From Gekko japonicus (Eukaryota): 64,000 bases of DNA. Below the pieces are notes generated by a model. It was not told where the DNA came from and made no database searches. It was given only the letters and a program-made list of their open reading frames with translations. How positions within the stretch are numbered: the stretch's first letter is position 1; the number at the start of each line of letters is the position of its first letter. Positions 1 through 48,359 of this stretch are shown piece after piece. Position numbers and translations under genes: made by a program. The stretch lies in NCBI RefSeq assembly GCF_001447785.1, contig NW_015164217.1, forward strand, positions 111,577 to 175,576, read 5' to 3'.

Positions 1-256
1 GGTCTCGGTCACACCTGTCTCGGCCGCCCCCTCATCCTCATCACCCAAGCCCCTCAAGGCATTGACGAATGTGGATTTGCCGGCACCGGACTCTCCAGTG
101 ACAGCAATATCAAGCTGGGCGTTCCAGATGGTCTCCAGGCTGCACTGGATACGCGTCACCACCTCAGAAAGACCTCCCAGCTCATAGGCCTCCTGGATCT
201 CGGCAAGCTCCTTCTCAGTGATCAGTTCAAAGCCTACGCGGGCAGGTTTCAGGACC
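1..256 (-). CDS. IRGQ: IRGQ orthologue, coding exon 2 (partial; continues beyond window start): linker plus start of second IRG GTPase domain
   Basis: Not in the ORF track; translated by hand on the minus strand after acceptor ttcccacag| (AG ends at 257): (R)VLKPARVGFELITEKELAEIQEAYELGGLSEVVTRIQCSLETIWNAQLDIAVTGESGAGKSTFVNALRGLGDEDEGAAETGVTET. G1 GESGAGKS is at 96-73 and is followed by G2 TGVTET. Phase 2 matches the donor at 5810. Aligns with recalled human IRGQ RRLLPPAQDGFEVLGAAELEAVREAFETGGL. Confidence 0.85.
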
Positions 257-290
257 CTGTGGGAATCACAGAATCATAGAGTTGTTAGGG

Positions 291-775
291 ACATAAGAAC
301 ATAAGAGATGCCAATGTTGGATCAGGCCAAAGGCCCATCCAGTCCAACACTCTGTGTCACACAGTGGCCAGAAATACCAGGTGCCATCAGGAGGTCCACC
401 AGTGGGGCCCGGACATTAGAAGCCCTCCCACTGTTGACACCCCCCCAAGCACCAAGAAGACAGAGCATCACTTGCCCCAGAGCCCCTAGCTATACATTGT
501 GGCTAATAGCCACCGATGGACCTCTGCTCCATATGCTTATCTAATTCCCTTTTGAAGCCGTCCATCCTTGTAGCTGCCACCACTTCTTGTGGCAGTGAAT
601 TCCATGTGTTAATCACTCTTTGGGTGAAGAAGTACTTCCTTTTATCCGTTCTAACCCGACCGCCCTGCAATTTCATGGAGATCCCACGGGTTCCTATACT
701 GTGAGAAAGGGAGAAGAATACCTCTTTCTCTACCTGCTCTTTCCCATGCATCATCTTATAAACCTCAATCATGTC
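291..775 (-). mobile_element. CR1 LINE 3' fragment (further pieces at ~9000-9245 and 38218-38412)
   Basis: ORF 503..1039 contains MIEVYKMMHG...KRKYFFTQRVINTWNSLPQEVVAA...FKRELDKHM, typical of the CR1 ORF2 C-terminus; cataagaacataag tail. Confidence 0.85.
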
Positions 776-1863
776 CTCCAAGGTCATCGAGTCCCACCCC
801 CTGCACAATGCAGGAAACCCACAAATACCTCCTCCCCACCCCCAGTGACCCCTGCTCCATGCCCAGAAGATGACAAAAAAACCCAACCCGAATCTCCGGC
901 CAAACTGGCCTGGAAAACAATTGCTTCCTGACCCCAAAGTGATGATCAGCATTTCCCTGAGGGTGTAAGAAAGGGCCACGAGAACTACGCCCTGAGGCAA
1001 CCCTTCCTGCCCTCCGTCTCGTGATCTGCCTAAGTTCACAGAATCCGCATTGCTTCCAGATGGCCACCTAGCCTCTGCTTGAAAACCCCCAAAGAAGAAG
1101 AGCCTCCCGAGGAAGCCTGTGGAACTGCTCTGTCAGGAAGTTTGTCCTAACGTTTAGCCAAAATGTTTAGTGTTTAATGTTTTGAAGAAAGAGTGGAGTG
1201 GATTGTAGGCCAGGATGGATCTCACATGGCTACAATCAGTGATGTGGGCTTGAAGTTTCAAATGTAAGTAAATAATATAGATATGTCAGCAAAATGCCAT
1301 GACCTGGATATCCCAGGCAAGCAAGCCCGAACTCGCCAGATCTCGCAAGCCAAGTGGGGCCGACCCTGGCAAGTATCTGGATGGGAGACTTCCAAGGAAT
1401 ACCAGGGTTGGGAGGCAGAGACAGGCTATCTCTCTGAACCTCTGAACATCCTCCATGCTGAGGAGGAGGAGGAGGAAGAGAAAGAAGAAGAGGAAGAAGA
1501 AGAGATTGGATTTATACTCGTCACTCAGAGTGGCTTACAAACCCCTTCCCCTCCCCACAACAGACACCCTGTGAGGTAGTTGGGGCTGAGAGAGCTATTT
1601 AGAGAACTGCTCTTGAGAGAACAGCTCTGAGAGAACTTGTGACTGACCCAAGGTCACCCAGCAGCTGCACGTGGAGGAGTGGGGAATCAAACTCGGTTTT
1701 CCCATATTAGAGTCTGCCACTCTTAACCACTACACCAAACTGGCCAGAGGTCGCCATGACTTCCAGGCATGGGAGCACAAAAAAGCACAGACAGACACAC
1801 ACATATACAATGCAACCCCCCAAAAAATAAAATGTCAGCAAAAGGAGGTATATATCCACCATG

Positions 1864-2266
1864 CAGGGGTCATTTCCTGCAGGAGTGCACAGGAGCGGAG
1901 CTCCGGCAGTAAAGAGCCCAAGGGGCGGGCACATGCAACAAGCCCCACCCCCTGCTCCCAGCAGCCCTCAGTCAGAGCAAGAAGCAGCCAGGTAAGTTGC
2001 AGAGCCCCCCCGTTCAAAACAGTCCAGTGGCAGCTTTAAGACCAAGTTTTATTCAGGTACAAGCTCTTCCTCCTCTGTGAGGACAGATCTGCATTCCCCC
2101 TCCCAAATAGCTAGCAATCCAAAACAGTCCAGTGGAGCCTGAGCAGTGGGTGTTGCCTTCTGACACACTTCCAGTGATGTCAGGGGATGTGGCATCTGCA
2201 AATAAGTTATGCTAATGAGTTATGCTAATGAGCTCCTGCACCTCTTTTTCTAGGAAATGACCCCTG
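1864..2266. mobile_element. hAT-type MITE, TIR CAGGGGTCATTT (other copies ~12590-13009, 19881-20271, 27744-28128, 49879-50076, 52743-53563, 60461-60870)
   Basis: Terminal inverted repeats plus 8-bp TSD ccaccatg (1856-1863 / 2267-2274); TSD acaacaca at the 19881 copy. Confidence 0.85.
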
Positions 2267-2332
2267 CCACCATGTACAAGCTTGGACCACCCACAAAGAA
2301 GCACAAGAGCCCTGACACAACTATAGACAAAG

Positions 2333-2530
2333 GAGCCATGGTTCAGTGGTAGAACATCTGCTTGGCATGCAGAAGGCCCCAGGTTCAATCCCCGGCATCT
2401 CCAGCTAAAAAGACCAGGTCGTAGGTGACATCATAGCTGATGAAAGGCCCTGGAGAGTCACTGCCAGTCTGAGTAGAGAATATTGATGTTAATGGACTAA
2501 TGGTCTGATTCAGTATTAAGGCAGCTTCAT
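2333..2530 (+). mobile_element. tRNA-headed SINE, Squam2/AnolisSINE2-like (others ~20490-20700, 21250-21460, 39600-39820, 45290-45670)
   Basis: tRNA-like head with A/B boxes (tggttcagtggtaga...ggttcaatccc) and tail gattcagtattaaggcagcttc. Confidence 0.65.
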
Positions 2531-3084
2531 GCCTGCAGATAAACAGACCGTATTTACATACATGAGACAGGAAATTTTCCATGGGAAAATATGGCAGTTT
2601 TCCTCCCCCACATCACTGGCTGCCTTAAGTACTAAAATGACGAAGCTGAGTAAGTGTGATGTTAGTACAGAGGGGTTGGATCCTGGGAATCTCTTCTGCC
2701 AGGTTTTCCTTCAAGAGAGAAAGATTTCCTCCAGCGGAGATTGACTCTTCCTGAGAGACAAAGGCTTCTTCTATTGGAGAAAAGTCTTTCTTTGTTGAAA
2801 GAAGTTTTCCTCTGTTGGCAGAAACCTTACGGGAAGGGCGTCGCAGGATCTAACCCGGTGGCTTCAGGAATGCGGACTCTGATGACTCCGCAAGCCTGGC
2901 TGTTACAGAGACGGCTCTGAGAGAAATACTTTTCAGCTGACGTTGTATCATAATAACTATGTAAAAAATGCTGTTCAACTGGATTGGCCCAAGTGACTGT
3001 AACATGAACATCATCCCTGAGTAGTTCCTTTGGAGCAGACACTGTTTACCTCGGGAGGGGGCACTTTTACCCATCTCAGTCTCA

Positions 3085-3420
3085 AAACGAATTGCAATTG
3101 CTAATGAAGCTCAAGACAATGCATCCACCTGGACTTAATCGAGACCTAGGTTCCCTTTCTCATTACCAGTGCTGATTTCTCCATGCCTACTACCCCTCTG
3201 CATATCACACCTAATCCAATCATGCCCGCTATTGTAATTTACCTGCTACTGTCATTCGCCTGCTGTAGTCATTCGGCATATGAAATCACTCCATTCTCCA
3301 AGACAAAAGGACAGACAGACTAACTTTCTAGCTGTATCTGATGAAGTGAGCAGTGACTCTCGAAAGCTACCCTGCCACAAATTTTGTTAATCTTTAAGGT
3401 GCTACTGGACTCTTGCTCTA
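3085..3420 (+). mobile_element. Penelope-like element 3' fragment
   Basis: Remnant reading ELQLLMKLKTMHPPGLNRDLG, resembling the GIY-YIG C-terminus, followed by ctgatgaagtgagc...cgaaagct...aaggtgctactggactc. Confidence 0.55.
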
Positions 3421-3611
3421 TGCTAAAGTTGCAGGAAAATTAACAGATCCCCCCCCACCGCCGCATTAAAGGTGCATTATTTAGTGTGTGTCAACGCAGC
3501 CTCAGGTAAGTTATTAGGGACTGTAGTCTAACTGTGTTTAGCTTGCATAAACTAGGATCCTGCTATGTAATTTCTGTATCATTTAATGTGTTAAGACTTA
3601 TGCTAGGAGAC

Positions 3612-3870
3612 TCAGTTTGGTGTAGTGGGTAAGAGTGGCGGACTCTAATCTGAGAAAACCGAGTTTGATCCCCCCACTCCGCCACATGCAGCTGCTGGAG
3701 TGACCTTGGGTCAGTCACAAATTCTCTCACAGCTGTTCTCTCAAGGGCAGTCCTCGAAAGAGCTCTCTCAGCCCCACCCACCTCGCAGGGTGTCTGCTGT
3801 GGGGAGGGGAAGGGAAAGGAGATTGTAAACCACTCTGAGTGAAGAGCAGGGTATAAATCCAACCTTTTCT
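3612..3870 (+). mobile_element. Squam3-like tRNA/CORE SINE (many copies: ~1500-1747, 14020-14290, 28230-28495, 29282-29550, 35060-35750, 45905-46310, 50515-50765, 51715-51955, 57505-57780, 58135-58400, 59168-59625, 61803-62290)
   Basis: Recurrent cagtttggtgtagtggttaag...ggactctaatctgggagaacc...ctcagccccacctacctcacagggtgtctgttgtgggg...gggtataaatccaatc unit. Confidence 0.8.
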
Positions 3871-5809
3871 TCTCTCTTATGTCCAGGGCCGCCTGTTGTT
3901 GTTAAATTTTAGACTGTCGCCTAGGGCAACGGCTCGACGAGGGCGCCATTCTGGCCGGCCTCATCCCCTCCTCGCCCCGCACAGGAAGCCTCCCTTGCCG
4001 GCTTCTTGCCCCGTCCCCGGTAAGAGACTCCTCTCTTTTCAACCCCCCAGACAGAAAGAGAAGGAGGTGGGGGGGGAGGCGCGGGGAACAGCCCCCACGG
4101 TCTCTTAGAAGCTTTTTTTGTAGCCTGGCACAGGCCCCCTTCCCCTCCCCTTGAGCGAAACCCGCCCCCCCCTCCCCGCACGTATTTGCAACTCACCCCC
4201 TTGGTCCGCCCGCTGCGGCTCCCGCACCCACCCCTGTNNNNNNNNNNNNNNNNNNNNNNNNNNNNNNNNNNNNNNNNNNNNNNNNNCTGCAACCTGATAT
4301 AGCTAGGGCCGGTCCATTATTGTTAAATTTTAAGCCATCGCCTAGGGCAACGGCTCAATGAGGGCACCATTCTGGCCGGCCTCGTCCCCTCCTCGCCTCG
4401 CACAGGAAGCCTCCCTTGCCAGCTTCTTGCTCCGTCACTGGCAAGAGACTCCCCTCTTTGCAGCCCCCCAGAGAGAAAGAGAAGGAGGCAGGGGGGACAG
4501 GCGCGGGGAACAGCCCGGGACGACGGAAAAGTGCAGCTCACCCTCTGTCGTCCCCTCGGCCTGCCCGCTGCGGCTCCAGCACCTGCCCCCATCCTGCACC
4601 AGGACGGGGGGCGCCAGAATGTATCCTCGCCTAGTGGGCAAAAAAACTTGGGGCCATCACTGCTTATGTCTACGCTTCGCTTCAGTTCTGTTTTTAGATT
4701 TCTGATTGGTTCTACAACCTTAAACCCATCGTGCTGTTTAATGAATACCTCATCCTGTCAACTGTACTGACTCACTCTTGGTAATCCGCCTTGAATCCAA
4801 GAGAGAAAGGCGGACTATGAACGATGTCATTTAAAACAAAATGAATACCGCCAAATCTCCACGAGTTTCCCAAACCCTAAGGTCAACCACGGGATGGCCC
4901 CTACTCAGACCAAAACTGCGCAGGAAGAAAGAAGACGTTTAGCTCTTGCGTGTGCTTCTGTTGATCCGAACCTACTCCCCAGATCTTGGCAGCTAAGCAG
5001 GGTCAACTCTAGCAAGTACTTGGATGCAATGCTCCCTCTAAGCTGTGGAGTCTTGTGAGCAAAAATCCTACTTTGTGAGCTAGTGGCATTAAAGTTGTGA
5101 GCGAGCGATTTGGCTGCTGCGTAAATTAGTTTGCTCTGCAGCCATCCTCCCTGAGCTAAGACCAAAATGTGTGAGCTGGAGGCTAAAAAACTGTGAGCTA
5201 GCTCNNNNNNNNNNNNNNNNNNNNNNNNNNNNCAGCAATGTTCCCTCTAAGCTGTGGAGTCTTGTGAGCAAAAATTCTGCTTTGTGAGCTCCTGGCATTC
5301 GAGTTGTGAGCGAGCAATTTGGCTACTGCATCAATTAGTTTGCTCTGGAGCCATCCGTCCTGAGCTAAGACAAAAAGGTGTGAGCCGGAGGCTAAACAAC
5401 TGTGAGCTAGCTCACACTCACTCGGCTTAGGTCACACTAATTCGGCTTAGGTCACACTAATTCGGCTTAGAGGGAACACTGACGACCAGTGTTCCCTCTA
5501 AGCCGAATTAGTGTGACCTAGCTCAGTTTTTGAGCCTCCGGCTCACACCTTCTTGACTTAGCTCAGGAAGGAGGGCTCCAGAGCAAACCAACTTATGCAG
5601 TAGCCAAATTGGCTCGCTCACAACTTTAGCGTCAGGAGCTCACAAAGTCGGATTTTCGCTCACAAGTCTCCACAGCTTAGAGGGAGGAACCCACCCACCC
5701 CCACACTTGTAATTAGGACCATGGCCACAGTCCCATCCTGTTTCCCCCAAACGCAGCCCCCGCAAAGCCCTGCCGAAGGTTCCCGCAGCGTCCAAGCCAT
5801 TGTACTGAC

Positions 5810-6402
5810 CTCTCGTATATTTCTACATCTTTCAGCAGTGTTTCTCGCAGTTGGGGGCAGTCCAGCGCGTAGGGCTCAAACGCGGAGATCAGGAACACAA
5901 AGGGCTCCCCGAGGCCGTGGGCCCCGAGAGACTCAGCACAGACGCCCCGCAGAGCGTTGAGTACCTCCGACCGGTCGTAGCGTTCGCCCATCAGCCGCTT
6001 GAGGGTGTGCACCTCCAGGTCGGCCTTGGTCCGGGCAAAATAGACTTTCTTGCCAGCCACTCGGACCTCCCCGGCAAGGCGGGCGTGGACCTCATCGAAC
6101 TTGCCATCCGTCACCATGACAAACACGTCCGCCTCCCCTAGCCATCGCTCCGCTTGTCCTTCGCCCTCCAGTTCCAACTCCCATATCAGTAAGTTGGGGT
6201 GGGAGGGATCGGGGTACATGACGGGACCCCCCGGTTTAGGTAGGGCACCCACGGGCGCGGATCCAACATCCCCTTCTGTCATCCCTCGCACGGCGTTCAG
6301 GAAGGCGGACTTGCCCACACCGGGCTTGCCTATGACAACCACGGAGACATCCCCCTGCTCAGGGGAACCTGAGGTGGAGCTCTGAGGGGTCTTGAGAGGC
6401 AT
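5810..6402 (-). CDS. IRGQ: IRGQ orthologue, coding exon 1: N-terminal IRG-type GTPase domain
   Basis: Within ORF 5713..6510. Acceptor tttcag| at 6427, ATG at 6402 (MPLKTPQ...), donor GAG AG|gtcagt at 5810 (593 nt, phase 2). Motifs: QGDVSVVVIGKPGVGKS (recalled human IRGQ QGDVTALFLGPPGLGKS), WELE in place of WDLPG, RTKAD (G4), LISAF (G5). Confidence 0.85.
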
Positions 6403-7877
6403 TCCGGATGCAGGAAAAGGGCGTCCCTGAAAGATGCTGCGGAAACATGAGAAAAGGGAAAATGTGAAGCGGAGGCAGAGGTTTTGCCCGGAGGCTAGCA
6501 TTAAACACAACGAACTTTGCCAGATTATATTTTACGCAGGGCTCTTTCTGTAGAAAAAAACCAGCAGGAACTCATTAGCATAATAGGCCACACCCAACAG
6601 CAGGAACTCATTAGCATATTGGGCTACGCCCCTGACAGCACAGCTCATTGGCACATTAGGCCACACCCCCATGTTACCAGAAGTGTGCTCATCCAGCCAC
6701 ACCCACCTTTTGCTTCTTATTCTGTTTACCCAGGGCTTTTTTTGTAGCAGGAACTTCTTTGCATGTTAGGCCACACACCCCTAATGTAGCCAATCCTAAT
6801 GAGTTCCTGCTGTTGAGTGTGGCCTATTATGCTAATGAGTTCCTGCTGGGCATGGCCAATTTGGGAGCCAGCCGGAACGCCGTTCCTGTGCGTTCCTGCC
6901 CAAAAATAGCCCTGATTACGCCAATTTTCTATCAAGCTGCCAAAATGGAACTAGTTAGCCTCCAGCCGTGAACAACCTGCTCTAATACTTTCTACTAATT
7001 CCTCTGCTTGCTGCTGAAGATGAGACACATATCTGCCCCCCCCAATCTAGAGCAAACCAAGCGCTATCAGCTCCAACCCACTGTTTGTTTGCACCATGCT
7101 AAACAAAGCGGTAGAAAGGGAAGGAAAATATACGCCCTTGATTGGGGCAGAGCCTTAAAATAAATCACTCAGTGGCTATCTAAGCACCGTTAGCCTTTTA
7201 AAACAGGCCTTGGCCAATTTTCTTTGGCTTTACGAGCTGCCCTAAAAGATTTAGGAGCCAGATTTATTTTTCAGCCTTTTCATATTTTCATAACCATGTG
7301 TTGTAATCATGGCTACCGCAAAACCTAATTCTAAACTCCCCATAATTTCTTGTCCTTTTTAAAAGCGATCACAAGCAATGCTCCCTCTAAGCTGTGGAGC
7401 CTTGTGAGCAAAACTTCTATCTTGCGGGCTATTGGCATTAAAGCTGTGAGCGAGCGATTTGGCGACTGCATAAATTACTTCGCTCTGGAGCCACCCTCCC
7501 TGAGCTAAGACAAAAATGTGTGAGCCAGAGGCTAAAAAACCGTGAGCTAGCTCACACTCACTCAGCTTAGAGGGGACACTGAATTCACAAGTGGTGTCGA
7601 AGGAGAGTTTTATGGATCCCGTGGATTACCCAAAAGACAAATCAGGGGGTTCTGGATCAACTCAAGCCTAAACTCTCCCTAGAAGCTAGAACGACTGAAC
7701 TGAGGTTATCATACTTCGCATTATGAGAAGACAAGAGTCACTGGAAAAGATAATGATGCTAGGAAACGTTGAAGGCCGAAGGAAAAGAAGACCCAGCATG
7801 AGACGGATTGACTCAATCAAGGAAGCTACAGCCCTCAGTTTGCATGACCTAAGTGAGGTTTGTTCATGGATAGGAGC

Positions 7878-8234
7878 AGGGCTTTTTTTGTAGAAAAGGC
7901 CCAGCAGGAACTCATTAGCATAATAGGCCACACCCAATAGCAGAAACTCATTCGCATATTAGGCCACACCCCCATGTTACCAGAAGTGTGGTCATCCAGC
8001 CACACCCACCTTTTGCTTCTTATTCTGTTTACCTTGTTTGTTGTCAAAACCCAGGGCTATTTTTGTAGCAGGAACCCCTTGCATGTTAGGCCACACACCC
8101 CTAATGTAGCCAATCCTAATGAGTTTCTGCTGTTGGGTGTGGCCTGTTATGCTAATGAGTTCCTCCTGGGCGTGGCCAACTTGGGAGCCAGCCGGAACTC
8201 CGTTCCTGCGCGCTCCTGCCCAAAAATAGCCCTG
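7878..8234. mobile_element. hAT-type MITE, TIR CAGGGCT (copies 6537-6914, 8506-8875, 18384-18779, 53044-53439)
   Basis: cagggctttttt...aaaaatagccctg with 8-bp TSD gataggag; internal ctcattagcat repeats. Confidence 0.85.
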
Positions 8235-8312
8235 GATAGGAGGTTTTGGAGGACAGAGAGAAGTCAGAGAGAACTTAACGGACACGTCAAAGGTGTGTAC
8301 ATAAAAACGAAG

Positions 8313-10960: not shown

Positions 10961-11796
10961 CTCAAGAAGCAACAGTTAGAACCGGATATGGAACAACTGA
11001 TTGGTTTAGCATAGGAAAAGGAGTACGACAAGGATGTATATTGTCACCTTGCTTATTTAATATATATGCAGAGTACATCATGCGAAATGCTGGCCTGGAT
11101 GAATCACAAGCGGGAATTAAGATTGCTGGGAAAAAGATCAACAACCTCAGATATGCAGACGATACCACTCTAATGGCAGAAAGTGAAGAGGACCTTAAGA
11201 GCCTCTTGCTCAGGGTCAAAGAGGAGAGCGCAAAAGTGGGCTTCAAGCTCAACATCAAGAAAACTAAGATCATGGCATCCGATCCCATCACTTCTTGGCA
11301 AATAGAAGGGGAAGTCGTTGAAGTAGTGAAAGATTTCACGTTCCTGGGATCCCAGATCACAGCAGCCATGAAATTAAAAGACGCCTGCTCCTTGGGAGGA
11401 AAGCGATGGCGAACCTAAACAGCATGATAAAAAGTAGAGACATCACCCTGCCAACAAAAGTCCGCATGGTCAAAGCAATGGTATTCCCAGTAGTCATGTA
11501 TGGCTGCGAGAGTTGGACTATAAGGAAGGCCAAGCACTGAAGAATAGATTCTTTTGAACTATGGTGCTGGAGAAGACTCTTGAGAGTCCCTTGGACTGCA
11601 AGAAGAACAAATCAGTCAATCCTCAAAGAAATCAACCCTGACTGTTCCCTGGAAGGCCAGATAATGAAACTGAAGCTCAAATACTTTGGCCACCAAATGA
11701 GAAGGGAGCACTCACTGGAGAAGACCCTGATGCTGGGAAAGATTGAAGGTCAAAGAAGACGGGGACGGCAAAGGATGAGATGGTTAGACAGTGTCA
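10961..11796 (+). mobile_element. RTE-BovB LINE fragment (RT C-terminal half, frameshifted); other fragments 33895-34311 minus, 51283-51451 minus, 61350-61787 plus
   Basis: SPCLFNIYAEYIMRNAGL...NLRYADDTTLMAESEEDL...VPWTARRTNQSILKEINPDCSLEG...RGRQRMRWLD; (CAA)n tail in 3'-complete copies; frameshift near 11360. Confidence 0.92.
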
Positions 11797-14700: not shown

Positions 14701-14855
14701 AAAAGACAACCGCAATGCAAGGCCTGTGCAATGCCGTTTCCTGGCGTCCAAGCCGCGTTCTCCCCACCCCATTTCGCTGACCAAAACCCAGCCTTGCTGG
14801 TAGACAGAAGGAAGCAATGGGGTATTTTCATGCATAAGCCGGTAGCAAGACGCGG

Positions 14856-15358
14856 AAATGTCAGCGGATACAATTTGCTATCCTACCAAACCCAAAAGAT
14901 TCAAATTTGGGCCCAGAGACCCTAATGGAAAACCCATTCCGCATTTTTATTGCAACTCTACTTGTGCCCTAATCTTTTCCAATGGAGCCCAGGCAGGTCA
15001 ATAGCATTCCTGGCTCCCATTATTTCCAATGGGCCTTCCGGCGTCTCCCATTGTTTCCAATGGGCAATCCTGTCCTTCCTTTTAGTACATCCCCGAAACG
15101 GGGATCTACGAAATGTCAGCGGATGCAATCTGCTATCCTACCAAACCCAAAAGATTCAAATTTGGGCCCAGAGACCCTAATGGAAAACCCATTCCGCGTT
15201 TTTATTGCAACTCTACTTGTGCCCTAATCTTTTCCAAGGGAGCCCAGGCAAGTCAATTGGCAATCCTGGCTCCCATTATTTCCAATGGGCCTTCCAGCGT
15301 CTCCCATTGTTTCCAATGGGCAGTCCTGTCCTTCCTTTTAGTACATCCCCGAAACGGG
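14856..15358. repeat. Direct tandem duplication, ~255-bp unit, 2 copies
   Basis: aaatgtcagcggat...catccccgaaacggg starts at both 14856 and 15111 with few substitutions. Confidence 0.9.
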
Positions 15359-15369
15359 CTATTAGGAAT

Positions 15370-15760
15370 AGGGCGGATCGGGCGCGGATGGAGGGCGCTC
15401 TGCGACCGCACCCGACGGCACCTATTCCAGGGCGCAGAGAGACCCACCCGCCCCTTTTAATCCTCTCCGCACCTGCTAACCAGCGACCCCCGTCGGCTCC
15501 AGCGGATTACCGGCGCCGCTCCTCTTTGTCTACCGATCGCCGCCCGGAAACGTCAGAAGGAGGCGGCTTCGGAGGAAGAGGAGGAGCCGCGTCCTTCTGC
15601 CTCCGACCCCCGTAGGTTTCTGTTTCCCCGGCTGCGCTCAAGGGGCGTCTCTTGCGCGCTACCCCGGGGGAGGCAGGAGGGGATCTGCGCCAAAAGGATC
15701 GGCCGGCCGCACCGGGCGGGCAAAGGTAGGGGTCGCCAACCTCTCCGGGTGGGTAAATGG
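15370..15760. promoter_or_regulatory. CpG island between the two divergent IRG genes (candidate promoter/non-coding first exon)
   Basis: CpG-dense unique sequence with GC boxes (GGGCGG at ~15371), ETS-like CCGGAA at ~15544 and ISRE-like GGTTTCTGTTTCCC at 15615-15628. Confidence 0.6.
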
Positions 15761-18700
15761 CAAAAGATCCACGAGCAGGTATAAAGAAAACCAAAATATT
15801 AGTAATTTGGTGGTGGTGGTTTGAACCTCCAGGCGGGGCCTGGAGATCTCCGGGCGGCAGAGATCAGCTCCCCTGGAGGAAAGGGGTGCTTTGGTCGCTC
15901 CCCTGCCCGAACCTTGCCTCGCCCCGGAAGGCGTTGTCAACCTCCAGGTGGCACCAGGAGATCTCCCGCGATTGCAATTGAGCTCCAGGCGACCGGGATC
16001 AGTTCCCCTGGAGGAAATGGCTGCCTTGGAGGGTGGACTCCGTGATACTGTAGACAGGTGGGGTCCCTGGTTCCCCAAATCCCCCCTCCCCAGGCTCCCC
16101 ACACACCCCCCCCAAATCTCCAGGTATTTTCCAGCCCATTGCTGGCATCCCTATCCTCAGGTCTCCAGGAATCTGCCAACCCTAGGTAAAGGATATGTCA
16201 GGAAAGGGGGTGGCTGGGGGCCAGAACCTCAGTGGGGAGGGGGGTTAGGTAGGGGAAAGGGGCTCCAGAGCCGGGACACGCCTGGGTCCTTTTGGAGAAA
16301 AGGGGTTGGGCGGGGCTCTCTCCTGGGTTCTCAGGTTTGCTGGTGGAGGGAGACAAAAGGAGTTGTTTTCTTTCATTTCCCAGGCCAGCGCAGCAGCAGG
16401 AAATACTAGCCGGGTTTTTTTTGGTTCTTGGAAGGGGGTCATGGTTGGGTGGTTTGGTTTTACTTCCTCTAGAAAGGGCGGATTCTAAGGTTCCCCCAAA
16501 CTCTTCCCTTTCCGGGCTGGTCTCTCTTCCCTTTAGCTAGGTCTCTTTCCTTTGAGCTCTGTTAGGTTGGAAGTCGGCTGGCGGAGCTTAAAACTACAGT
16601 GAGGTAAAGGTAAAGGTTCCCTTGCTGGAAAGCCAGTCGAATCCGACTCTAGGGTTGCGGTGCTCATCTCCGTTTCCAAGCCGAAGAGCCAGCGCTGTCC
16701 GAAGACATTTCCGTGGTCATGTGGCTGGCATGACTAAACACCAAGGCACATGGAACGCTGATCCCTTTTCACCGAAGTGGTACCTATTTAAAAGGTAAAG
16801 GTAAAGGTTCCCTTGCTCGAAAGCCAGTCGAATCCAACTCTAGGGTTGTGGTGCTCATCTCCGTTTCCAAGCCGAAGAGCCAGCGCTATCCGAAGACGTT
16901 TCCGTGGTCTGTGGCCGGCATGACTAAACACCAAGGCGCACGGAACGCTGTTCCCTTTTCACCGAAGTGGTACCTATTTATCTACTTGCAATTTCTTGCT
17001 TTCGAACTGCTAGGTTGGCAGGAGCTGGAACTAGAGACGGGAGCTCACTCCGTCATGTGGCACACTCGGGTCTCGAACTGCTGAACTACCGACCTTCCAC
17101 AGCCTGCAGTTCAGCATCTTAACCACTTGAGCCACCGCAACTCCAAAACTACAGTACCCAGCCGATTTCATCCTACCCATTACCTACCCAGCTGCCTCAA
17201 TGCCCAATTAATACACAGGTGCTTTAAAAAAAAAATGTAATGGGTTTCTGGGAAGAGCTGGTGGCTGAAGCTCTTGGAGGGAGTGTTGCAAACGTTCCCT
17301 CTAAGCTGTGGAGTCTTGTGAGCAAAAATTCTACTTTGTGAGCTACTGGCATGAAAGTTGTGAGCGAGGGATTTGGCTACTGCATAAATTAGTTTGCTCT
17401 GGAGCCCTCCTTCCTGAGCGAAGACAAGAATGTGTGAGCCGGAGGCTAAAAACCTGTGAGCTAGCTCACACTGACTCAGCTTAGAGGGAACACTGGTGTT
17501 GACCCCCCCCTCTTGGGGCTGCGTTTGCATTTATCTATAGCCCCCTTTTCTCCCTGGTTGGGACTAAAGCAGCTTAGAAGATCGTTTTCCCCTCTCCCAG
17601 TGCTCCTGCAACCACAACCCTGTCAGGTAAGCCAAAGGGGGAGTTTGTGACTGGCCCAAGATCACCCTGCGAGCGTCTGTGAGAGAAGCGGGGATTCGAA
17701 TCTGGGTTACCCAGTGTCCATGACTGTATCTGCGACATCACACCGGCTTCCAGGGTTGACCTGAAGGACTAGTAACTCGGGGCTTTCTCGCATGCAGTTT
17801 CCTGAAATGGAACTGGATCGAGTGAAAACAGGGCTTTGCTGCCGTTGAGACTGCAGATTTGGCTTAGCTCGCCTTCCGATTTTTTAAAACAAAAGAACCC
17901 ACCACCTATCTTGGTGGCAGAGGGAGGAGACTTACCACATTCTGCTTTTTAGCAGAGCAACAGGCAGGAATCCGACAGGTCCAGTATGCACTTTGTGACT
18001 GCAGTGTTCCCTCTAAGCTGAGTTAGTGTGAGCGACCTCACCGTTTTTTAGCCTCCGGCTCACACGTTTTTGTCTCAGCTCAGGAAGGGACGGCTCCCGA
18101 GCAAACTAATTGATGCAGCAGCCAAATGGCTCGCTCACAACTTGAATGCCGGCAGCTCACAAAGTAGAATTTTTGCTCACAAGTCTCCGCAGCTTAGAGG
18201 GAGCCTTGGCTGGGACTGCCTCTCTCTGGCACTGCAAAAAAGAATCTCGGTGCAGGAAGATGAACAGGAAAGCAGGCAACAAAAGAGAGAAGAGAAGGCT
18301 TGAGAAACAACTGTCCGGGACTCCCTATGGGGCCTCACCTGACACGTGGAAAAAACTCTCTCTCTCTCTCTCTCTCTCTCACCCAGGGCTATTTTTGGGC
18401 AGGAACGCACAGGAACGGAGTTCCAGCTGGCTCCCAAGTTGGCCACGCCCAGCAGGAACTCATTCGCATAATAGGCCACACCCAACAGCAGGAACTCATT
18501 AGGATTGGCTACATTAGGGGTGTGTGGCCTAACATGCAAAGGAGTTCCTGCTACAAAAAAACCCCTGGGTTTTGACAACAAACAAGGTAAACAGAATAAC
18601 AAGCAAAAGGTGGGTGTGGCTGGATGACCACACTTCTGGTAACATGGGGGGTGCGGCCTAATGTGCTAATGAGCTGTTCTGTCAGGGTGTCGCCTAATAT

Positions 18701-18839
18701 GCTAATGAGTTCCTGCTGTTGGGTGTGGCCTATTATGCTAATGAGTTCCTGCTGGGCTTTTTCTACAAAAAGAGCCCTGGTCACCCATCCGCTGTGCTGC
18801 ATAACACGCCCTTTCTTCATTCTCCCCGCAGTTTCCATC

Positions 18840-19522
18840 ATGGCCTGTTTGGACGAATCACAGCTGAGAAACCTCAAGGCCCAGTACGAGGCCCAGAATG
18901 CCAAGGGCACTGCCTCCCAAATCCAGGAGCTGGTGGATTGCGTTACCACCCTCAAGATAAAGGTTGGCTTCTTGGGGGGGCGCGGAGCAGGGGTGAGCAC
19001 GCTGGTCCAGGCTCTGTTGGATAAACCTCGCCGGGTGAACGATCCCTGGGCTTACTTCCGGGAGACTCCAGAGCCCACCAAACAGCTGGAGGCGCACGTC
19101 CATCCGACCTACCCCAACCTCACCCTGTGCGACCTCCCCGGCTTCGAAGCGTCCGAGAAGCCGGCCGCGTATCTCAAGCGCTTGGGCGACCTGAGCAAGT
19201 ACAGCTGCTTCGTGGTGGTGGTGAGCGGAAGCTTGGGAGACACCCACCTGCAGGTCATGAAGGCCGTCAAGCAGAAGGGGAAGACCTGCCTCCTGGCGCG
19301 CACCAAAGTGGACTTGGATCTGCACACGGCCAAGAGGCGGCTCCGCTTCAAGTACAACCCCGGCGAGCGACTGGGCCTGATCCGGAAGGAGCTGACGGAG
19401 ACGTTGGCCAACCACCGGATGGACACCAAGAAGGTCTTCCTGGTGTCGGGGCTAGAGGCGGAGAAATACGAGTTCAGATACTTTGAGGACGGCTTGGAAG
19501 GGGAGGTGCTCAGCTTGAAGAG
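18840..19522 (+). CDS. Two-domain immunity-related GTPase (IRG / interferon-inducible GTPase 5-like), coding exon 1: degenerate GTPase module
   Basis: Within ORF 18624..19526, whose first ~50 codons are MITE sequence. Acceptor tctccccgcag| at 18831, ATG at 18840, donor AG|gtgagg at 19522 (683 nt, phase 2). Motifs GGRGAGVS (G1, K to V), HPTYPNLTLCDLPG (G3), RTKVD (G4), FLVSG (G5). Confidence 0.85.
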
Positions 19523-21721
19523 GTGAGGAAGGAAGGAAGGAAGGGGGCGGGGGGGAACCTTGGGGATACCAAAGCTTCTGGGATTTTGAGAAGCTTCGCA
19601 CCAGAAATACCAAAACTAACTTGAACATATATATATATATATATGAAGTTGTCTTGATCTGGATCAGACCCTTGGTCCATCAAGGTTAGTATTTTCTACT
19701 CAGACTGACAGTGGCTTTCTAGGATCTTAGGCCGACCTCTTTCACATCACTTATTATTATTATTATTATTACTGTTGTTGTTATCATCATCATCAACAAA
19801 ACAACAACAACAATAATAAAATTAAACTTATGACTCGCCCAATCCTCGCTACCGCAGGGCTCTGAGCGATGTACAACACACAGGGGTCATTTTGTAGAAA
19901 AAGAGGTGCAGGAGCTCATTAGCATAACTCATTAGCATAACTTATTTGCATATGCCACACCCCCTGACATCACCCGAAGTGCCTGCCGCTCAGGCTTCAT
20001 TGGACTGTTTTGGATTGCTAGCTATTGGGGGGGGGGACGCGCAGATCTGTCCTCACAGAGGAGGGAAAGCTTGTACCTGAATAAAACTTGGTCTTAAAGG
20101 TGCCACTGGACTGTTTTGGACCAGGGGGGGCTCTGCAACTTACCTGGCTGCTTCTTGGTCTGACTGAGGGCTGCTGGGAGCAGGGGGTGGGGCTTGTTGC
20201 ATGTGCCCGCCCCCTGGGCTCTGTACTGCCGGAGCTCCGCTCCTGTGCGCGCCTGCAGGAAATGACCTCTGACAACACATAATAAAAAGATTAAAACCAT
20301 AAAGTAAGCACCTCAATAATGTTAATCCAGCAATCCAAAAAATATCAAGTGGTGAAATGACAGTTTCTTCCCAATTCCGGATTGCGGCTACCTCGTGGGT
20401 ATGGGGATGAGGAATAAAATAATCTGGTGGAAAGAGAGGAGGAGGGCGCCAGCCAAGATGGAAGCTGTCGCTGTCCTCAACCAAAGGTCCTTTTAAGTAG
20501 AGATGCTGGGGACTGAACCTGGGACCTTCGGCATGCCAAAAAATATGCTTTGCTGCTGAGCCACGGCCCCTCCCTAACAAAGGAACACACGAAGCCGCCT
20601 TATACTGAATCCGACCACTGATGTATCATAGTATTGTCTGCTCAGACTGACAGCGGTTCTCCTGGGTCTCAGGCAGAGGGTCTTTCACATCACCTAAGAC
20701 AGGGATGTCAAACATAAGGCCTGGGGGCCGGAACTGGCCCATCTATGGCTTTTATGTGGCCCGCGAGCCACTGGTGTAAACGAGGGAGTGTTGGGGGGGA
20801 GTGGGGGGAGCCATTCGATTGTGGCTTCAACCCAGCAGAAGAACCTCATCTGCAGCAGTCAAGCATCGTGGGGGTATCTGCCCAGTGCTGCACTGCTACC
20901 TCTCCAGTCCACCCATGTGGGTTTTCCTCTGCAACCCCCCCCCAGTCTAAGGGATCTTGCAGGGAGAATACACCAACTTGGAGCTTACGAGCCGCTGTCT
21001 TATATGCACAATTTATATCTCTGGTACCTGGCATTACATTTTATGGCACACATGGCCCAGCCCGAGAAAGTGACATTTATGTTAGATCCGGCCCTCCTAA
21101 CAACTGAGTTTGACACCTCCGCTGTAGATAGTTTGAAATACCCCTGTCTGAGACCCTAAAGAGCCACTGTCAGTCAGATTAGGCGATATTGTCTTTGAGA
21201 GACCAGTGGGTTGACTGAGTGGAAGGCAGCTTCACGTGCTCTCATTAAGGAAAGGGGCTGTGACTCCATAGTAGAGCATCTGCCTGGTATGCAGAGGGTC
21301 CCACATTTCATCCCAGGCATCTTCATAATAATAATAATAATAATAACTTATGAACCGCCCAATCCCCATTACCTCTGACCTAAGACCTGATTCTTTGAAC
21401 TGGGGATACCAGGGATTGAACCTGGGGCCATCGGCATGTCAAGCAGAGGCTCATTCCACCGTCACACAGTCCCTCCCCCAAATTTCATTGAGAATTGAGA
21501 CCTTGAGAATTAAGATCTCCATCAGAGGCCTTTTCTCAGGTTCCCCCTTCGTTCGAGGCGAGGCGGGTGGGTTGAACAAGGCAGGGACTTCTCGGTGGTG
21601 GCACCCTGGCATTCGAATGCTCTTTGCCCGGTGCCAGACCTTATTGGTTTCTGGCCCTGGACTAAGGCTTGAAGAGACAGTGAGCTGTTTGTCACCCCCC
21701 TTCTCCATGTTTTCTTCCTAG

Positions 21722-22889
21722 GAGCCATGGCGGGGACCTGGAAGACGTGACCGCCGTGAGCCCAAAGAAGATCGAAGAGCTGTACAACATCTGCCAGAGC
21801 GGCAGCTTGGCAGAAGTCCCGGGTGTGATCTCCTCGGCCCTGGAAGAGCCCTCGCAGATCCGTCTGGACGTCGCCGTGATCGGAGAAGCCGGTTGCGGGA
21901 AGTCCTCGCTGGTCAACGCCCTGAGAGGCGTGGCCGCTGGAGAGTCGGGTGCGGCCCCCACTGGGGTGACCGGGACGACGAGGAAAGCCACCGTCTACCC
22001 GCTTCCGCTCGTCCCCTACCTGTACCTCTGGGACCTGCCGGGAGTCGGAGTGACGGAGGAGGACGTGAGGCACCTGGACCTCAGCCGCTACGACTTCTTT
22101 CTCCTGGTGGCCTCCGAGCGCTATAAGCACGCCCACAGCTGCTTGGCCAGGGCCATCGCCGCAGCCGGGAAGGAGGCTTTCTTCGTACGAAGCAAGATAG
22201 ACGTGGACCTGGAGACCCGGCCCGGGAGCCAGCCCATCCCTAAAGAAGAGCTGCAGGAACAGGTGCGGGAGAGCTGCGCGGAGGCCCTGAAGAAGGACGG
22301 CGTCCTCTCCCCACAGGTCTTCCTGGTCTCCAGCCTCGCCCAGGAGGCCTACGATCTCCCCCTCCTCCAGGAAGCCCTGAGCCGTAGCGCTCCCGACCTG
22401 AAGAGGAAAGCTCTGCGGAGAGCCATCCCGACCGTCCTCTCCCGGCTGGTGAGGCGGAAGTCCAAAGTGCTGATGAAGGACGTGTGGGTGAAGGCCCTGG
22501 AGGTCTGCCTCTGCTGCGTGGAGAAGCCGGACCAGGACGTGACCAAGAACCTCATGACCAACATCGCCAGCTTCTGCATAGACCTTGGCCTGGACCAGGA
22601 GTCCTTGGCGCTCACCGCACAGGTCACCGGCAAAGCACTCAGGCTGCTTCAGGATCAGATCCGAAGCCCCTTCGCTAAGCCGCTGGACTCCGAATACGTG
22701 CTGAGTCTCATCGTCAAGCCGGTCTCGCTGTTCACGTGGGCTTGGGACTACGTGCCGTTCCACGGCCGGGGGACCAACCCGGAACCCGAGATCTCCTTCG
22801 AGTCCACTTATGGGATGTTGAAGCAAGTCGTGGTGGAACTGTCGGAGGATGCGGAGCGGGTGCTTCACGCAGCGCTTGTGGAAGGATAG
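21722..22889 (+). CDS. Two-domain IRG, coding exon 2: complete IRGC-like GTPase domain plus C-terminal helical region
   Basis: Acceptor ttttcttcctag| at 21721, in frame with ORF 21747..22889 via AG+G=Arg. Motifs GEAGCGKS, TGVTGTT, WDLPG, RSKID, FLVSS; TAG at 22887-22889. Joined CDS is 1851 nt = 616 aa. Confidence 0.9.
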
Positions 22890-23045
22890 AGCTGGGCGGG
22901 GAATTTGGGGGGGGGGAGGTTCAGTAATAGCAGCAACAGACCCGCCTGCCCCTCTGCCTTAAGGACAGCTGTTGTTTGGAAACTGGGGTGGATGAGTCAA
23001 GATCAGTGGGTCTGAGTACAATGCCGTACGATGGGTTGAATCACT

Positions 23046-48249: not shown

Positions 48250-48359
48250 CTAGTGAGACAACCAGAGGGGGGGAAACACAGTGAAGCAAGACACAGCTGT
48301 GATCCACCCGGTCAGCCCCTGCAGGACAGCTCCAGCAGCCACGTGGGGAACCTGTCTAC

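What the first reader, a model, noticed from the sequence alone, without database searches (positions are those of the whole stretch)
1..22889. Head-to-head pair of two-GTPase-domain IRG genes with the same exon architecture
Seen: two divergently oriented genes. Each has a first coding exon holding one IRG G-domain without the usual C-terminal helical region, then a phase-2 intron splitting an Arg codon (AG|G), then a second exon opening with an N-terminal helical segment and a second IRG G-domain. Known: most IRGs are single-domain, IRGQ is the two-module member, and mouse Irgb tandem fusions exist. Inference: an old inverted duplication of the IRGQ ancestor left a second, very divergent tandem IRG in this lineage, possibly co-regulated with IRGQ as an immunity/autophagy module. 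I recall no counterpart at the human locus.
Basis: partly seen in the sequence, partly recalled or inferred. Interest (0 to 1): 0.78.

Follow-up and report, generated by a model that had tools for sequence, protein, structure and literature searches.

The report
Gecko IRGQ and its forgotten twin
Two real, back-to-back gecko immune genes each encode a protein with two GTPase units; one is the gecko version of the autophagy receptor IRGQ and the other is an ancient sister gene that I did not find in mammals.

Summary
The window is Gekko japonicus. All four coding pieces match Pfam IIGP (E 2.5e-23 to 7.9e-68). Both introns are GT..AG, phase 2, and split AG|G Arg at the same alignment column. No coding piece touches an assembly gap.

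The plus-gene splice 19522/21722 is carried by one transcript-like contig in each of 2 of the 4 runs laid. Its 616-aa product equals an existing NCBI model.

The minus gene is the IRGQ orthologue. Crocodile, salamander and lungfish relatives are named IRGQ or IRGQ-like. Its N module is colinear with the solved human IRGQ N-domain. An LIR1-type motif is kept. Its splice was not tested with reads.

The plus gene is not lineage-specific. Orthologues run from lungfish, newt and caecilians to turtles, tuatara and squamates.

The two N domains group in trees (96/82; 80/73). They share an HT dipeptide in 79 of 79 domains, against 0 of 509 others. AU tests do not exclude rival histories.

Each N domain is disabled differently. 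Reptile C modules keep the GTPase motifs.

Co-regulation is untested. The scan found a different tandem IRG cluster on another piece of this genome.

The parts
1..256 (-). Minus gene (IRGQ orthologue), start of exon B: last base of the split Arg codon, N-terminal helical segment and the G1 motif of the second IRG module. It runs off the window.
   Evidence: Sequence. Pfam IIGP positions 3-73, E 6.1e-20. Colinear with orthologues P0056, P0049 and P0124.
220..231 (-). Codons F-E-L-I, an LIR1-type core motif ([WFY]xx[LIV]), 9-12 residues after the exon junction.
   Evidence: Read. The same place holds [FY]xxI in 10 of 11 minus-family rows printed; the Alligator model P0241 (491 aa) diverges right after F-E. 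Crocodile FEVI is aligned by HMMER to F-E-V-L at the C-terminal end of human IRGQ chain 8q6q_C. PMC13172515 places LIR1 at aa186-189.
73..96 (-). G1 (P-loop) GESGAGKS of the minus gene's C module, intact.
   Evidence: The motif table shows the G. kuhli proxy P0124 with G1, G3 DLPG and G4 TKVD.
257..5809 (-). Minus-gene intron, GT..AG, phase 2. It contains assembly gaps 4238-4286 and 5205-5232, so its length is only an estimate.
   Evidence: Not tested with reads.
5810..6402 (-). Minus gene exon A coding part (197 codons plus 2 bases): N-terminal truncated G domain. G1 GKPGVGKS (6307-6330) is intact. The G3 place reads ELEL (6169-6180) instead of DxxG. G4 is TKAD. The HT dipeptide is at 6004-6009. 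A likely acceptor AG at 6437-6438 suggests an upstream 5' UTR exon.
   Evidence: (IIGP 32-220). The acceptor is read from the sequence only.
15300..16100 (.). CpG island between the two genes (GC 0.61-0.62; CpG obs/exp 0.97 and 0.62 in the two flagged 500-bp windows starting 15301 and 15601, falling to 0.28 from 15901). It holds an ISRE-like core at 15616-15626 (minus strand). Candidate shared promoter; unproven.
   Evidence: The ISRE-like pattern has 2 matches in the window against 1.57 expected, so the count alone is not significant.
18832..19522 (+). Plus gene exon A (CDS from ATG 18840; 227 codons plus 2 bases): partial N-terminal helices plus a truncated G domain. G1 is GGRGAGVS (18975-18998) with Val 18993-18995 in place of the P-loop Lys. 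G3 DLPG and G4 TKVD are intact. The HT dipeptide is at 19323-19328.
   Evidence: (IIGP 6-219).
19523..21721 (+). Plus-gene intron, 2199 bases, GT..AG, phase 2.
   Evidence: Joint 19520>21720 'skips 2199, GT..AG (cut +2)'. It is carried by one contig in X1 (1915 nt, 0 other letters) and one in X2 (1858 nt, 0 other letters).
21722..22889 (+). Plus gene exon B: full IRG module with N-terminal helices, G domain (G1 GEAGCGKS 21882-21905, G3 DLPG, G4 SKID) and C-terminal helical domain. Stop at 22887-22889.
   Evidence: IIGP 1-341, E 7.9e-68; 100% identical to P0001; helices 440-613 in the model.

Best explanation
Positions 1-22889 hold two real, divergently transcribed Gekko japonicus genes. Both encode two-module IRG proteins. 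A first coding exon gives a G domain cut off just after the G-domain core. A phase-2 intron in an Arg codon follows. A second exon gives a complete IRG module: N-terminal helices, G domain and C-terminal helical domain.

The minus-strand gene is the gecko orthologue of IRGQ, of the roughly 598-aa class. The plus-strand gene (616 aa) is an ancient paralogue of it. Both most likely descend from one ancestral tandem gene that duplicated before lungfish and tetrapods split. The plus-type copy is kept in lungfish, salamanders, caecilians, turtles, tuatara and squamates, and I did not see it in mammals, birds or crocodilians.

Shown here: in both genes the C module keeps the G1, G3 and G4 GTPase motifs. 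The N domain has been disabled in complementary ways. The plus type has the P-loop Lys replaced by Val. The IRGQ type has lost the G3 DxxG.

Inferred: the C module is a working GTPase. The N domain is a pseudo-GTPase that serves as a built-in partner or docking surface. In the IRGQ copy, the N domain plus the conserved LIR1-type motif right after the exon junction would bind ATG8-family proteins, as in the human autophagy receptor. The plus copy has no such motif at that place, so it would use its N domain for another partner or for intramolecular control of its own GTPase.
For: Anatomy and Pfam matches.

Splice of the plus gene: one contig each in X1 and X2 lies on 18830-19520 and on 21720-22901 or 21720-22885, with 0 mismatches. 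These are 2 of the 4 runs laid, from two studies. The product equals NCBI model P0001.

Minus gene as IRGQ:
- Full-length orthologues of 598-605 aa join both modules.
- Crocodylus relatives are named IRGQ. Pleurodeles, Ambystoma and Protopterus relatives are named IRGQ-like.
- Exon A hits the human IRGQ N-domain 8q6q_C at E 1.3e-4, while plus exon A has no hit at E 0.01 or better.
- The minus-family profile hits 8q6q_C at E 2.7e-5, with profile positions 14-210 against chain 3-189. The plus-family profile does not show it among its best 60.
- Crocodile IRGQ hits 8q6q_C at E 3.5e-7, with the LIR1 residues aligned.

Common origin of the N domains:
- IQ-TREE on 97 domains gives a clade of plusN, minusN and shark first domains at 96/82.
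- An 84-row tree without the long branches gives the plusN+minusN split at 80/73 and all N-type domains at 93/84.
- FastTree on 588 domains gives an N-type clade at 0.943.
- An HT dipeptide 7-8 residues after G4 occurs in 40 of 40 plusN and 39 of 39 minusN domains. It occurs in 0 of 484 other domains and 0 of 25 other N-type domains.
- The intron sits at the same column and phase in both genes.

Motifs: plusN has P-loop Val in 35 of 40 and DxxG in 38 of 40. MinusN has Lys in 39 of 39 and DxxG in 0 of 39. The C modules are canonical.

Age: a Protopterus plus-type protein and a Lissotriton cluster member, and caecilians.

Fold: AF2 model with pLDDT 78.8. Foldseek top hits are IIGP1/Irga6, Irgb10 and Irgb6 at about 1e-16.
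Against: - The AU test does not reject a tree that holds plusN and plusC together (p 0.225). An internal duplication inside the plus gene therefore remains possible on G-domain data.
- The C modules are not sisters. PlusC sits apart with gar and Astyanax 'irgq1' proteins (96/87, on long branches), while minusC sits with shark and canonical IRGs.
- The sister relation of plusN and minusN was weak in FastTree (0.172) and only 80/73 in the reduced tree.
- No mammalian IRGQ sequence could be put in the trees. The match to the human N-domain is weak in absolute terms, and canonical IRGs score far better against gecko exon A.
- The minus-gene splice and its C module beyond G1 are not seen in this genome. 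I used the G. kuhli cluster representative as a proxy.
- The runs carrying the joined contig are only guessed to be RNA. The one certain RNA run (X21) had low depth and no joint rows.
- All functional statements are inference from motifs and from the human IRGQ literature.
Confidence: 0.75

Rival explanations
1. Convergent architecture. The two genes became tandem independently. For example, the plus gene may have duplicated its own G domain, or captured an upstream truncated IRG. The shared exon plan would then reflect the general way IRG tandems form, by splicing a G-domain exon onto the acceptor of a single-exon IRG.
For: The AU test does not reject plusN+plusC as one clade (p 0.225). The C modules are not sisters. 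Other tandem IRGs clearly arose independently: both domains of P0051-type, fish and mammalian tandems sit inside the canonical clade. Another gecko cluster is reported to splice a G-only exon onto a full IRG exon (s1-824277).
Against: The HT dipeptide is shared by 79 of 79 plusN and minusN domains and by 0 of 509 others. ML trees place plusN with minusN in all three analyses. The intron lies at the identical column and phase, splitting the same Arg. Both N exons end at IIGP position 219/220.
Confidence: 0.13
2. The plus gene, not the minus gene, is the true IRGQ orthologue. It has 616 aa and lies on the ZNF576-like side.
For: The length is close to what I recall for human IRGQ. The gene lies between the minus gene and a ZNF576-like ORF at 36991-37500. 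Its N domain has a degenerate P-loop.
Against: Plus exon A and the plus-family profile do not hit the human IRGQ N-domain (none at E 0.01 or better; not in the best 60). The minus exon and minus profile do hit it, colinearly. The IRGQ-named crocodile proteins fall inside the minusN clade. The LIR1-type motif is present only in the minus family.
Confidence: 0.06
3. On the plus strand there are two separate single-domain genes. The 18624 ORF has its own stop at 19526. Alternatively, the plus gene is a decaying pseudogene.
For: The unspliced ORF ends 4 bases past the donor. Depth in the one certain RNA run is low, and no junction read was listed there.
Against: Contigs in two runs join 19522 to 21722 exactly, with 0 mismatches across both exons. 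Full-length orthologues have intact frames. A clade of 40 plus-type N domains is found in the 588-domain tree, spanning lungfish to squamates. Logan contigs of 1.9-2.5 kb encode 618-643 aa proteins (P0007, P0010, P0036, P0041, P0042), which leaves little room for an intron.
Confidence: 0.03

Closest known systems
[quoted passage not shown]
   Same: The minus gene has an N-terminal G-domain followed by a full IRG-like module on a separate long exon. Its N module is colinear with the solved human IRGQ(1-189) chain. An LIR1-type motif sits at the same place (LIR1 aa186-189 in PMC13172515, passages read).
   Different: Bekpen 2005 (PMC1297648, passages read) reports that mammalian IRGQ lacks conserved GTP-binding motifs in the long exon. 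The gecko copy has an intact GESGAGKS in the window. Its close relative P0124 keeps G1, G3 and G4. So 'quasi' may be a derived state of mammals, with crocodilians also divergent. Salamander and lungfish relatives have three G domains. LIR2 was not examined.
Zebrafish irgg-irgq1 tandem transcript and fish 'irgq1' proteins (Bekpen 2005)
   Same: A truncated G-domain unit is spliced to a second IRG unit, with one of the two units degenerate. In the C-module tree, the plus-type C module groups with gar P0268 and Astyanax irgq1 P0324 (96/87).
   Different: In Astyanax irgq1 the first domain is canonical (GDSGSGKS) and the second is degenerate (GETKSGVT). This is the reverse of the gecko plus gene. 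The fish first domains fall among canonical fish IRGs, not in the N-type clade. The grouping rests on long branches.
Mouse Irgb tandem IRG proteins and other tandem IRGs (P0051-type gecko genes, s1-824277)
   Same: Two IRG G domains lie in one polypeptide made by splicing.
   Different: In those tandems both domains are canonical and each other's close relatives, pointing to recent, independent fusions. The P0051 N module runs on past the KR where the plus and minus N exons end. The plus and minus genes share a distinct, old N-type domain.
Irga6/IIGP1, Irgb6 and Irgb10 (solved IRG GTPases)
   Same: The fold and family match. Best PDB sequence hits for all exons searched are Irgb10, Irgb6 and Irga6. 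Foldseek top hits have E about 3e-16.
   Different: These are single-module proteins. The gecko proteins add a truncated pseudo-GTPase domain in front.

Membership tests
IRG / p47 GTPase family (Pfam IIGP PF05049) | Significant match to the IIGP model above its gathering score (24 bits). | tested here: met
   All 4 of 4 pieces match, at 83.2, 229.7, 114.5 and 72.1 bits.
IRG / p47 GTPase family (Pfam IIGP PF05049) | Canonical G1 GxxxxGKS, G3 DxxG and G4 (N/T/S)KxD in the G domain. | tested here: met
   Plus C module: GEAGCGKS, DLPG, SKID. Minus C module: GESGAGKS in the window, with DLPG and TKVD in proxy P0124. Not met in the N domains: plus N has GGRGAGVS and minus N has ELEL at G3.
IRG / p47 GTPase family (Pfam IIGP PF05049) | IRG fold: G domain flanked by N- and C-terminal helical domains. 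| tested here: met
   AF2 model of P0001 has pLDDT 78.8, with helices 242-269 and 440-613 around the second G domain. Foldseek hits IIGP1, Irga6, Irgb10 and Irgb6 at E about 1e-16, but with low TM-scores of 0.28/0.42.
IRGQ orthologue group (minus gene) | N-terminal G-domain colinear with the solved human IRGQ N-domain. | tested here: met
   Exon A against 8q6q_C gives E 1.3e-4. The family profile gives E 2.7e-5 over positions 14-210 against chain 3-189. Crocodile IRGQ, which lies in the same clade, gives E 3.5e-7. This is weak in absolute terms.
IRGQ orthologue group (minus gene) | LIR1 motif just after the N-terminal G-domain. | tested here: met
   FELI lies at 220-231(-). [FY]xxI is seen at that place in 10 of 11 minus-family rows printed. 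It is aligned to human LIR1 through the crocodile protein. Binding was not tested.
IRGQ orthologue group (minus gene) | 'Quasi' state: GTP-binding motifs of the long exon lost (Bekpen 2005). | tested here: not met
   G1 is intact in the window. G1, G3 and G4 are intact in P0124, P0049, P0155 and P0180. This is a descriptive feature of the mammalian proteins, not of orthology.
IRGQ orthologue group (minus gene) | Grouping with mammalian IRGQ in a tree, and the same chromosomal neighbourhood. | tested here: inconclusive
   No mammalian IRGQ sequence could be retrieved. One search gave 2 hits, and no mammalian IRGQ appeared in the lists. A ZNF576-like ORF lies 14 kb beyond the plus gene (atlas score 0.97, 167 shared features). 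The human gene order is recalled, not checked.
IRGQ orthologue group (plus gene considered) | Similarity to the human IRGQ N-domain and an LIR1 motif at the junction. | tested here: not met
   There was no 8q6q_C hit at E 0.01 or better, and none among the best 60 of the profile search. None of the 4 plus-family rows printed shows a full [WFY]xx[LIV] core at the site.
N-type (tandem first-domain) IRG clade | Truncation at IIGP position about 220, and the HT dipeptide after G4. | tested here: met
   The exons end at IIGP 219 and 220. HT is present in 40 of 40 and 39 of 39 domains, against 0 of 509 others.

The most novel reading that the evidence does not exclude
The two-module plan (disabled N-type G domain plus active IRG module) may be the ancestral state of jawed-vertebrate IRGs rather than an oddity. 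Sharks, bowfin, lungfish and tetrapods all carry N-type first domains. The classical single-exon IRGs, including the IRGC-type genes linked to IRGQ, would then derive from the C exon of an IRGQ-like tandem gene. On this reading the gecko head-to-head pair is a surviving, jointly interferon-controlled unit, driven by the CpG island with the ISRE-like site. One copy feeds autophagy through its LIR. The other acts as a GTPase effector or regulator that was lost in mammals.
Probability: 0.15. Interest if true: 0.7.

Novelty: new member of a known kind. Interest (0 to 1): 0.45.

Why it matters
IRGQ has recently become of medical interest as an autophagy receptor that removes MHC class I and helps tumours escape immunity. 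Its origin is obscure, because the mammalian protein is too degenerate to place in trees (Bekpen 2005).

The reptile locus shows what IRGQ may have looked like before that decay. It has a P-loop-bearing N domain with a lost G3, a conserved LIR1-type motif, and a C module with all GTPase motifs.

The locus also reveals a sister gene that I found no description of in the literature searched, conserved for over 300 million years by my reckoning, and not seen in mammals. The sister's N domain is disabled by a different lesion.

This gives testable contrasts. Does GTP control ATG8 binding in non-mammalian IRGQ? What does a tandem IRG do without the LIR? It also gives a cleaner framework for naming the many 'interferon-inducible GTPase 5-like' models.

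Tried and rejected
- Retrieving mammalian IRGQ for the trees failed. The search with crocodile IRGQ P0366 gave only 2 hits. No mammalian IRGQ appeared in the lists of the P0049 search (120 listed of 1384 hits; the few mammalian rows are other IRG models, e.g. Myotis 'cinema', koala, hyena TGTP2) or the HMMER representative search (150 unnamed rows listed of 787 hits, of which I named only 20). All three homologous-protein searches were then spent.
I have only the weaker fact that plus-type and minus-type proteins share the same longest contig in eight species that I paired from the tables: Carettochelys, Hemicordylus, Elgaria, Rhineura, Varanus, Gekko kuhli, Erythrolamprus and Rhinatrema.
- The idea that the plus ORF and exon B are separate genes is rejected.
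- I considered the plus gene as the IRGQ orthologue and rejected it.
- In one search I first misread a support value after re-rooting with Biopython (100/97 for plusN+minusN). One search, with treekit's own table, gives 80/73. Only that value is used. One search returned no answer and was repeated.
- The ISRE pattern count is not above chance: 2 found against 1.57 expected. Only its position in the CpG island is suggestive.
- The AF2 model has pTM 0.59, so I draw nothing from the relative placement of the two G domains.
They may bear on the motif and LIR statements.
- Literature: search terms are given. None of the papers listed describes a reptile IRGQ paralogue. I read passages only of PMC1297648, PMC13172515 and PMC9232189. 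The Cell 2024 IRGQ paper is cited there as reference 16, but I did not see it.

Full report
What is there. The window comes from Gekko japonicus. Exon B of the plus gene is 100% identical to an NCBI protein of that species (P0001).

On the plus strand an ATG at 18840 opens a 683-base coding stretch. It ends ...AAG AG|GTGAGG at 19522. After an acceptor (..TTCCTAG|G) the frame continues from 21722 to a stop at 22887-22889.

On the minus strand an ATG at 6402 opens a 593-base stretch. It ends ...GAG AG|GTCAGT at 5810. After ..CCCACAG|G the frame continues from 256 to the window's first base. Both introns are thus phase 2 and split an Arg codon AG|G.

Pfam's IIGP model matches all four pieces. The two first exons cover model positions 6-219 and 32-220 of 375. 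The two second exons restart at positions 1 and 3.

The three assembly gaps lie in the minus intron (two) and between the genes (one). No coding piece touches them. They leave the minus intron's length, and strictly its continuity, dependent on scaffolding.

Are the exons joined? For the plus gene, yes. Of four runs laid on 17001-23000, X1 and X2 come from two studies. Their kind is only guessed to be RNA. They hold about half of the stretch's sampled words, close to the share I calculated for the exons. Each has one contig (1915 and 1858 nt) lying without a mismatch on 18830-19520 and on 21720-22901 or 21720-22885. The listed joint 'skips 2199, GT..AG (cut +2)', which is 19522/21722.

X10 has the exons on separate contigs. 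X21 is the only certain RNA run. It has depth 0-4 on the exons and no joint rows.

The X1 contig carries 42 further letters 5' of 18830, where an acceptor AG sits at 18830-31. So there is at least one upstream non-coding exon.

The joined product is the existing NCBI model P0001 (616 aa). I did not build or search a joined model myself. Exons were searched apart, and database proteins were used by id.

For the minus gene I had no read call left, and most of exon B lies outside the window. The join rests on orthologues. P0124 is a 598-aa protein from the cluster that holds the window's own product. It is 96% identical over exon A. Python P0056 and Carettochelys P0049 run colinearly through both pieces.

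Which gene is IRGQ? A search with the turtle orthologue of the minus gene found proteins of about 598 aa in squamates, turtles and tuatara. It also found proteins that NCBI names 'immunity-related GTPase family Q protein-like' in Pleurodeles, Ambystoma and Protopterus. An HMMER search with minus exon A, followed by a name look-up, found Crocodylus proteins named IRGQ. These fall inside the minus N-domain clade.

The solved human IRGQ(1-189) chain 8q6q_C is hit by minus exon A at E 1.3e-4. A profile of 13 minus-family proteins hits it at E 2.7e-5, with profile positions 14-210 against chain 3-189. Plus exon A gives no hit at E 0.01 or better. The plus-family profile does not list it among its best 60, which reach E 0.27.

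Crocodile IRGQ hits 8q6q_C at E 3.5e-7. The printed alignment ends with crocodile ...DFEVIGA over human ...GFEVLGA. PMC13172515 (passages read) places human LIR1 at aa186-189 and calls residues 1-189 the 'N-terminal G-domain'.

In the gecko the same place reads GFELI (220-231, minus strand). An [FY]xxI core stands there in 10 of 11 minus-family rows printed. The exception is the Alligator model P0241, which diverges right after F-E. None of the 4 plus-family rows printed shows a full [WFY]xx[LIV] core at the site.

The ORF at 36991-37500(-) looks like ZNF576 (atlas score 0.97, 167 shared features, a lead only; zf-C2H2). From memory, ZNF576 is IRGQ's neighbour in man. I did not check the human locus.

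I therefore take the minus gene as the IRGQ orthologue, with a probability of about 0.85. No mammalian IRGQ sequence could be brought into a tree.

The plus gene. Its orthologues are 611-631-aa models in many squamates and turtles. There is a partial model in tuatara, and 624-aa proteins in the caecilians Microcaecilia and Rhinatrema at 43-45% identity. Name look-ups add Protopterus (P0253) and a Lissotriton member of the P0041 cluster.

None of the 120 hits listed (of 140) that group with it is from a mammal, bird, crocodilian or frog. The search scores only the 8000 candidates sharing most words, so this is absence of evidence.

Plus-type and minus-type proteins share the same longest contig in eight species that I paired from the tables.

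The gene is therefore old and widespread, not a lineage novelty. It is already annotated, always as 'interferon-inducible GTPase 5-like' or similar.

Are the two genes duplicates of one tandem ancestor? I cut G domains out of 375 retrieved proteins and the four window pieces with an HMM built here. The domain counts were 176 with one domain, 181 with two, 18 with three, 2 with four and 2 with none. The set is biased towards long proteins.

FastTree on 588 domains gives an 'N-type' clade of 104 at support 0.943. It holds all plus N domains (40) and the IRGQ-type N domains (48 in that node). It also holds bowfin first domains, shark first and second domains, and the first domains of three-domain amphibian and lungfish proteins. 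All other 484 domains are on the other side. The direct sister link of plusN and minusN has only 0.172 support there.

IQ-TREE (LG+C20 PMSF, careful) on 97 chosen domains gives plusN+minusN+shark first domains at 96/82. All N-type domains together get only 48/45, and plusC is their neighbour at 54/79.

I then removed 13 long-branch rows: shark first domains, amphibian and lungfish first domains, Mercenaria, P0264, P0307 and Bombina. In that 84-row tree the split plusN+minusN against the rest has 80/73, and appears in 78% of bootstrap trees. All N-type domains have 93/84.

Against this, AU tests do not reject plusN+plusC as one clade (lnL difference 14.5, p 0.225). They also do not reject plusC+minusC (lnL difference 6.3, p 0.371).

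A tree of whole C modules (47 rows, 404 columns) puts plusC with gar P0268 and Astyanax 'irgq1' P0324 on one side (96/87, long branches flagged). MinusC, shark C modules and canonical IRGs are on the other side.

Two characters independent of the tree search favour common descent of the N exons. First, an HT dipeptide lies 7-8 residues after the G4 motif (..TKxDLxxHTxKR..). It is present in 40 of 40 plusN and 39 of 39 minusN domains. It is present in none of the 484 other domains and none of the 25 remaining N-type domains. Second, the intron lies at the identical column, phase and codon.

I put common origin by duplication of a tandem gene, before the lungfish-tetrapod split, at about 0.75.

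How it probably works. Shown: both C modules keep their GTPase motifs. The plus C module has GEAGCGKS, DLPG and SKID. The minus C module has GESGAGKS in the window, with DLPG and TKVD in P0124.

The plus N domain has Val for the P-loop Lys in 35 of 40 orthologues. The exceptions are Lys in the two caecilians and the two newt-type rows, and one gap. It keeps DxxG in 38 of 40.

The IRGQ-type N domain keeps the Lys in 39 of 39 but never has DxxG. It has E or K at the first place and L, M or V at the last.

The AF2 model of P0001 (13-row alignment, pLDDT 78.8, pTM 0.59) shows two Rossmann-like G domains. They are joined by a disordered linker (231-238) and followed by a long helical domain. Foldseek finds IIGP1/Irga6, Irgb10 and Irgb6 first, at E about 3e-16. 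The inter-domain geometry is not reliable.

Inferred: the C module is an active IRG GTPase. The N domain is a pseudo-GTPase that acts as a fixed partner or docking surface. Bekpen et al. proposed this for IRGQ-like units in tandem IRGs (PMC1297648, passages read).

In the IRGQ copy, the N domain with the LIR1-type motif would bind GABARAP-type ATG8 proteins as in man (PMC13172515). In reptiles this may still be under GTP control of the C module. The plus copy shows no such motif at that place and would have another partner.

A CpG island at about 15.3-16.1 kb holds an ISRE-like GGAAACAGAAACC at 15616-15626 on the minus strand. This is one of 2 matches in 64 kb, against 1.57 expected. It lies between the genes and might drive both. 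That is a lead, not a finding.

Comparison and novelty. The pair belongs to the IRG family by every test I could run. The minus gene fits IRGQ except for the 'quasi' feature, which it does not show. The plus gene is a member of the same old N-type tandem group but fails the two IRGQ-specific tests.

Other tandem IRGs are different. These include the gecko P0051 type, also noted by the scan on another piece of this genome (s1-824277), fish tandems, and mouse-like tandems. Their two domains are canonical and closely related to each other.

My literature searches listed no paper that describes a reptile or amphibian paralogue of IRGQ, or the intact GTPase motifs of non-mammalian IRGQ. Bekpen 2005 still described the IRGQ N-terminal extension as about 100 residues on three short exons. 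Supplements were closed, and subscription papers are not covered.

I class the finding as a new member of a known kind. The gene models exist, but the relationship and its implications appear to be undescribed.

Verdict. Interest is moderate (0.45): useful for IRG and IRGQ evolution and for designing experiments on IRGQ's ancestral mechanism, but built from known parts.

Noticed in passing
window 15300-16100, with 15616-15626 (-): A CpG island (GC 0.61-0.62; CpG obs/exp 0.97 and 0.62 in the two flagged windows) lies between the two IRG genes. Inside it is an ISRE-like core, GAAACAGAAAC. This is one of only 2 matches in the window (1.57 expected). It may be a shared interferon-responsive promoter.
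   Followed up: partly
window 36991-37500 (-) and 47684-48307 (-): Two C2H2 zinc-finger ORFs both end ...HEHY(I/M)RHARGEL. The first (170 aa) is nearest to a 'Zinc finger protein 576 family' cluster (atlas score 0.97). The second has no ATG and is probably an exon of a related gene, which I guess to be ZNF428-like.
   Followed up: partly
window 10962-11906 (+), beside the gap 11797-11894; also 61344-61772 (+): There are LINE-type remnants. An ORF at 11041-11418 matches reverse transcriptase RVT_1 (E 3.9e-13). Near-identical C-terminal tails (...RRRGRQRMRWLDSV) appear at two places in the window. Repeats common to many contigs give very high depth at 17.0-17.6, 18.0-18.8 and 19.8-20.4 kb in all runs laid.
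   Followed up: partly
proteins P0155, P0156, P0171, P0180 (related loci, not in the window): Salamander, caecilian and lungfish proteins named IRGQ-like have three G domains (790-831 aa). They carry an extra, very divergent first domain ahead of the IRGQ-type N domain.
   Followed up: partly
protein P0251 (Mercenaria mercenaria, 606 aa): A clam protein with two IRG G domains turned up in the HMMER search. It nests among vertebrate canonical IRGs on a long branch. This could be contamination, gene transfer or a true invertebrate IRG.
   Followed up: no
proteins P0268 (Lepisosteus) and P0324 (Astyanax 'irgq1'): Their C modules group with the plus-type C module (96/87, long branches). This hints that fish irgq1 and the tetrapod plus-type gene share a C-module lineage.
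   Followed up: partly
window 6437-6438 (-) and 18830-18831 (+): Both coding first exons are preceded by a good acceptor (..CCGCAG|). So both genes have upstream non-coding exons. For the plus gene, 42 extra contig letters support this.
   Followed up: partly
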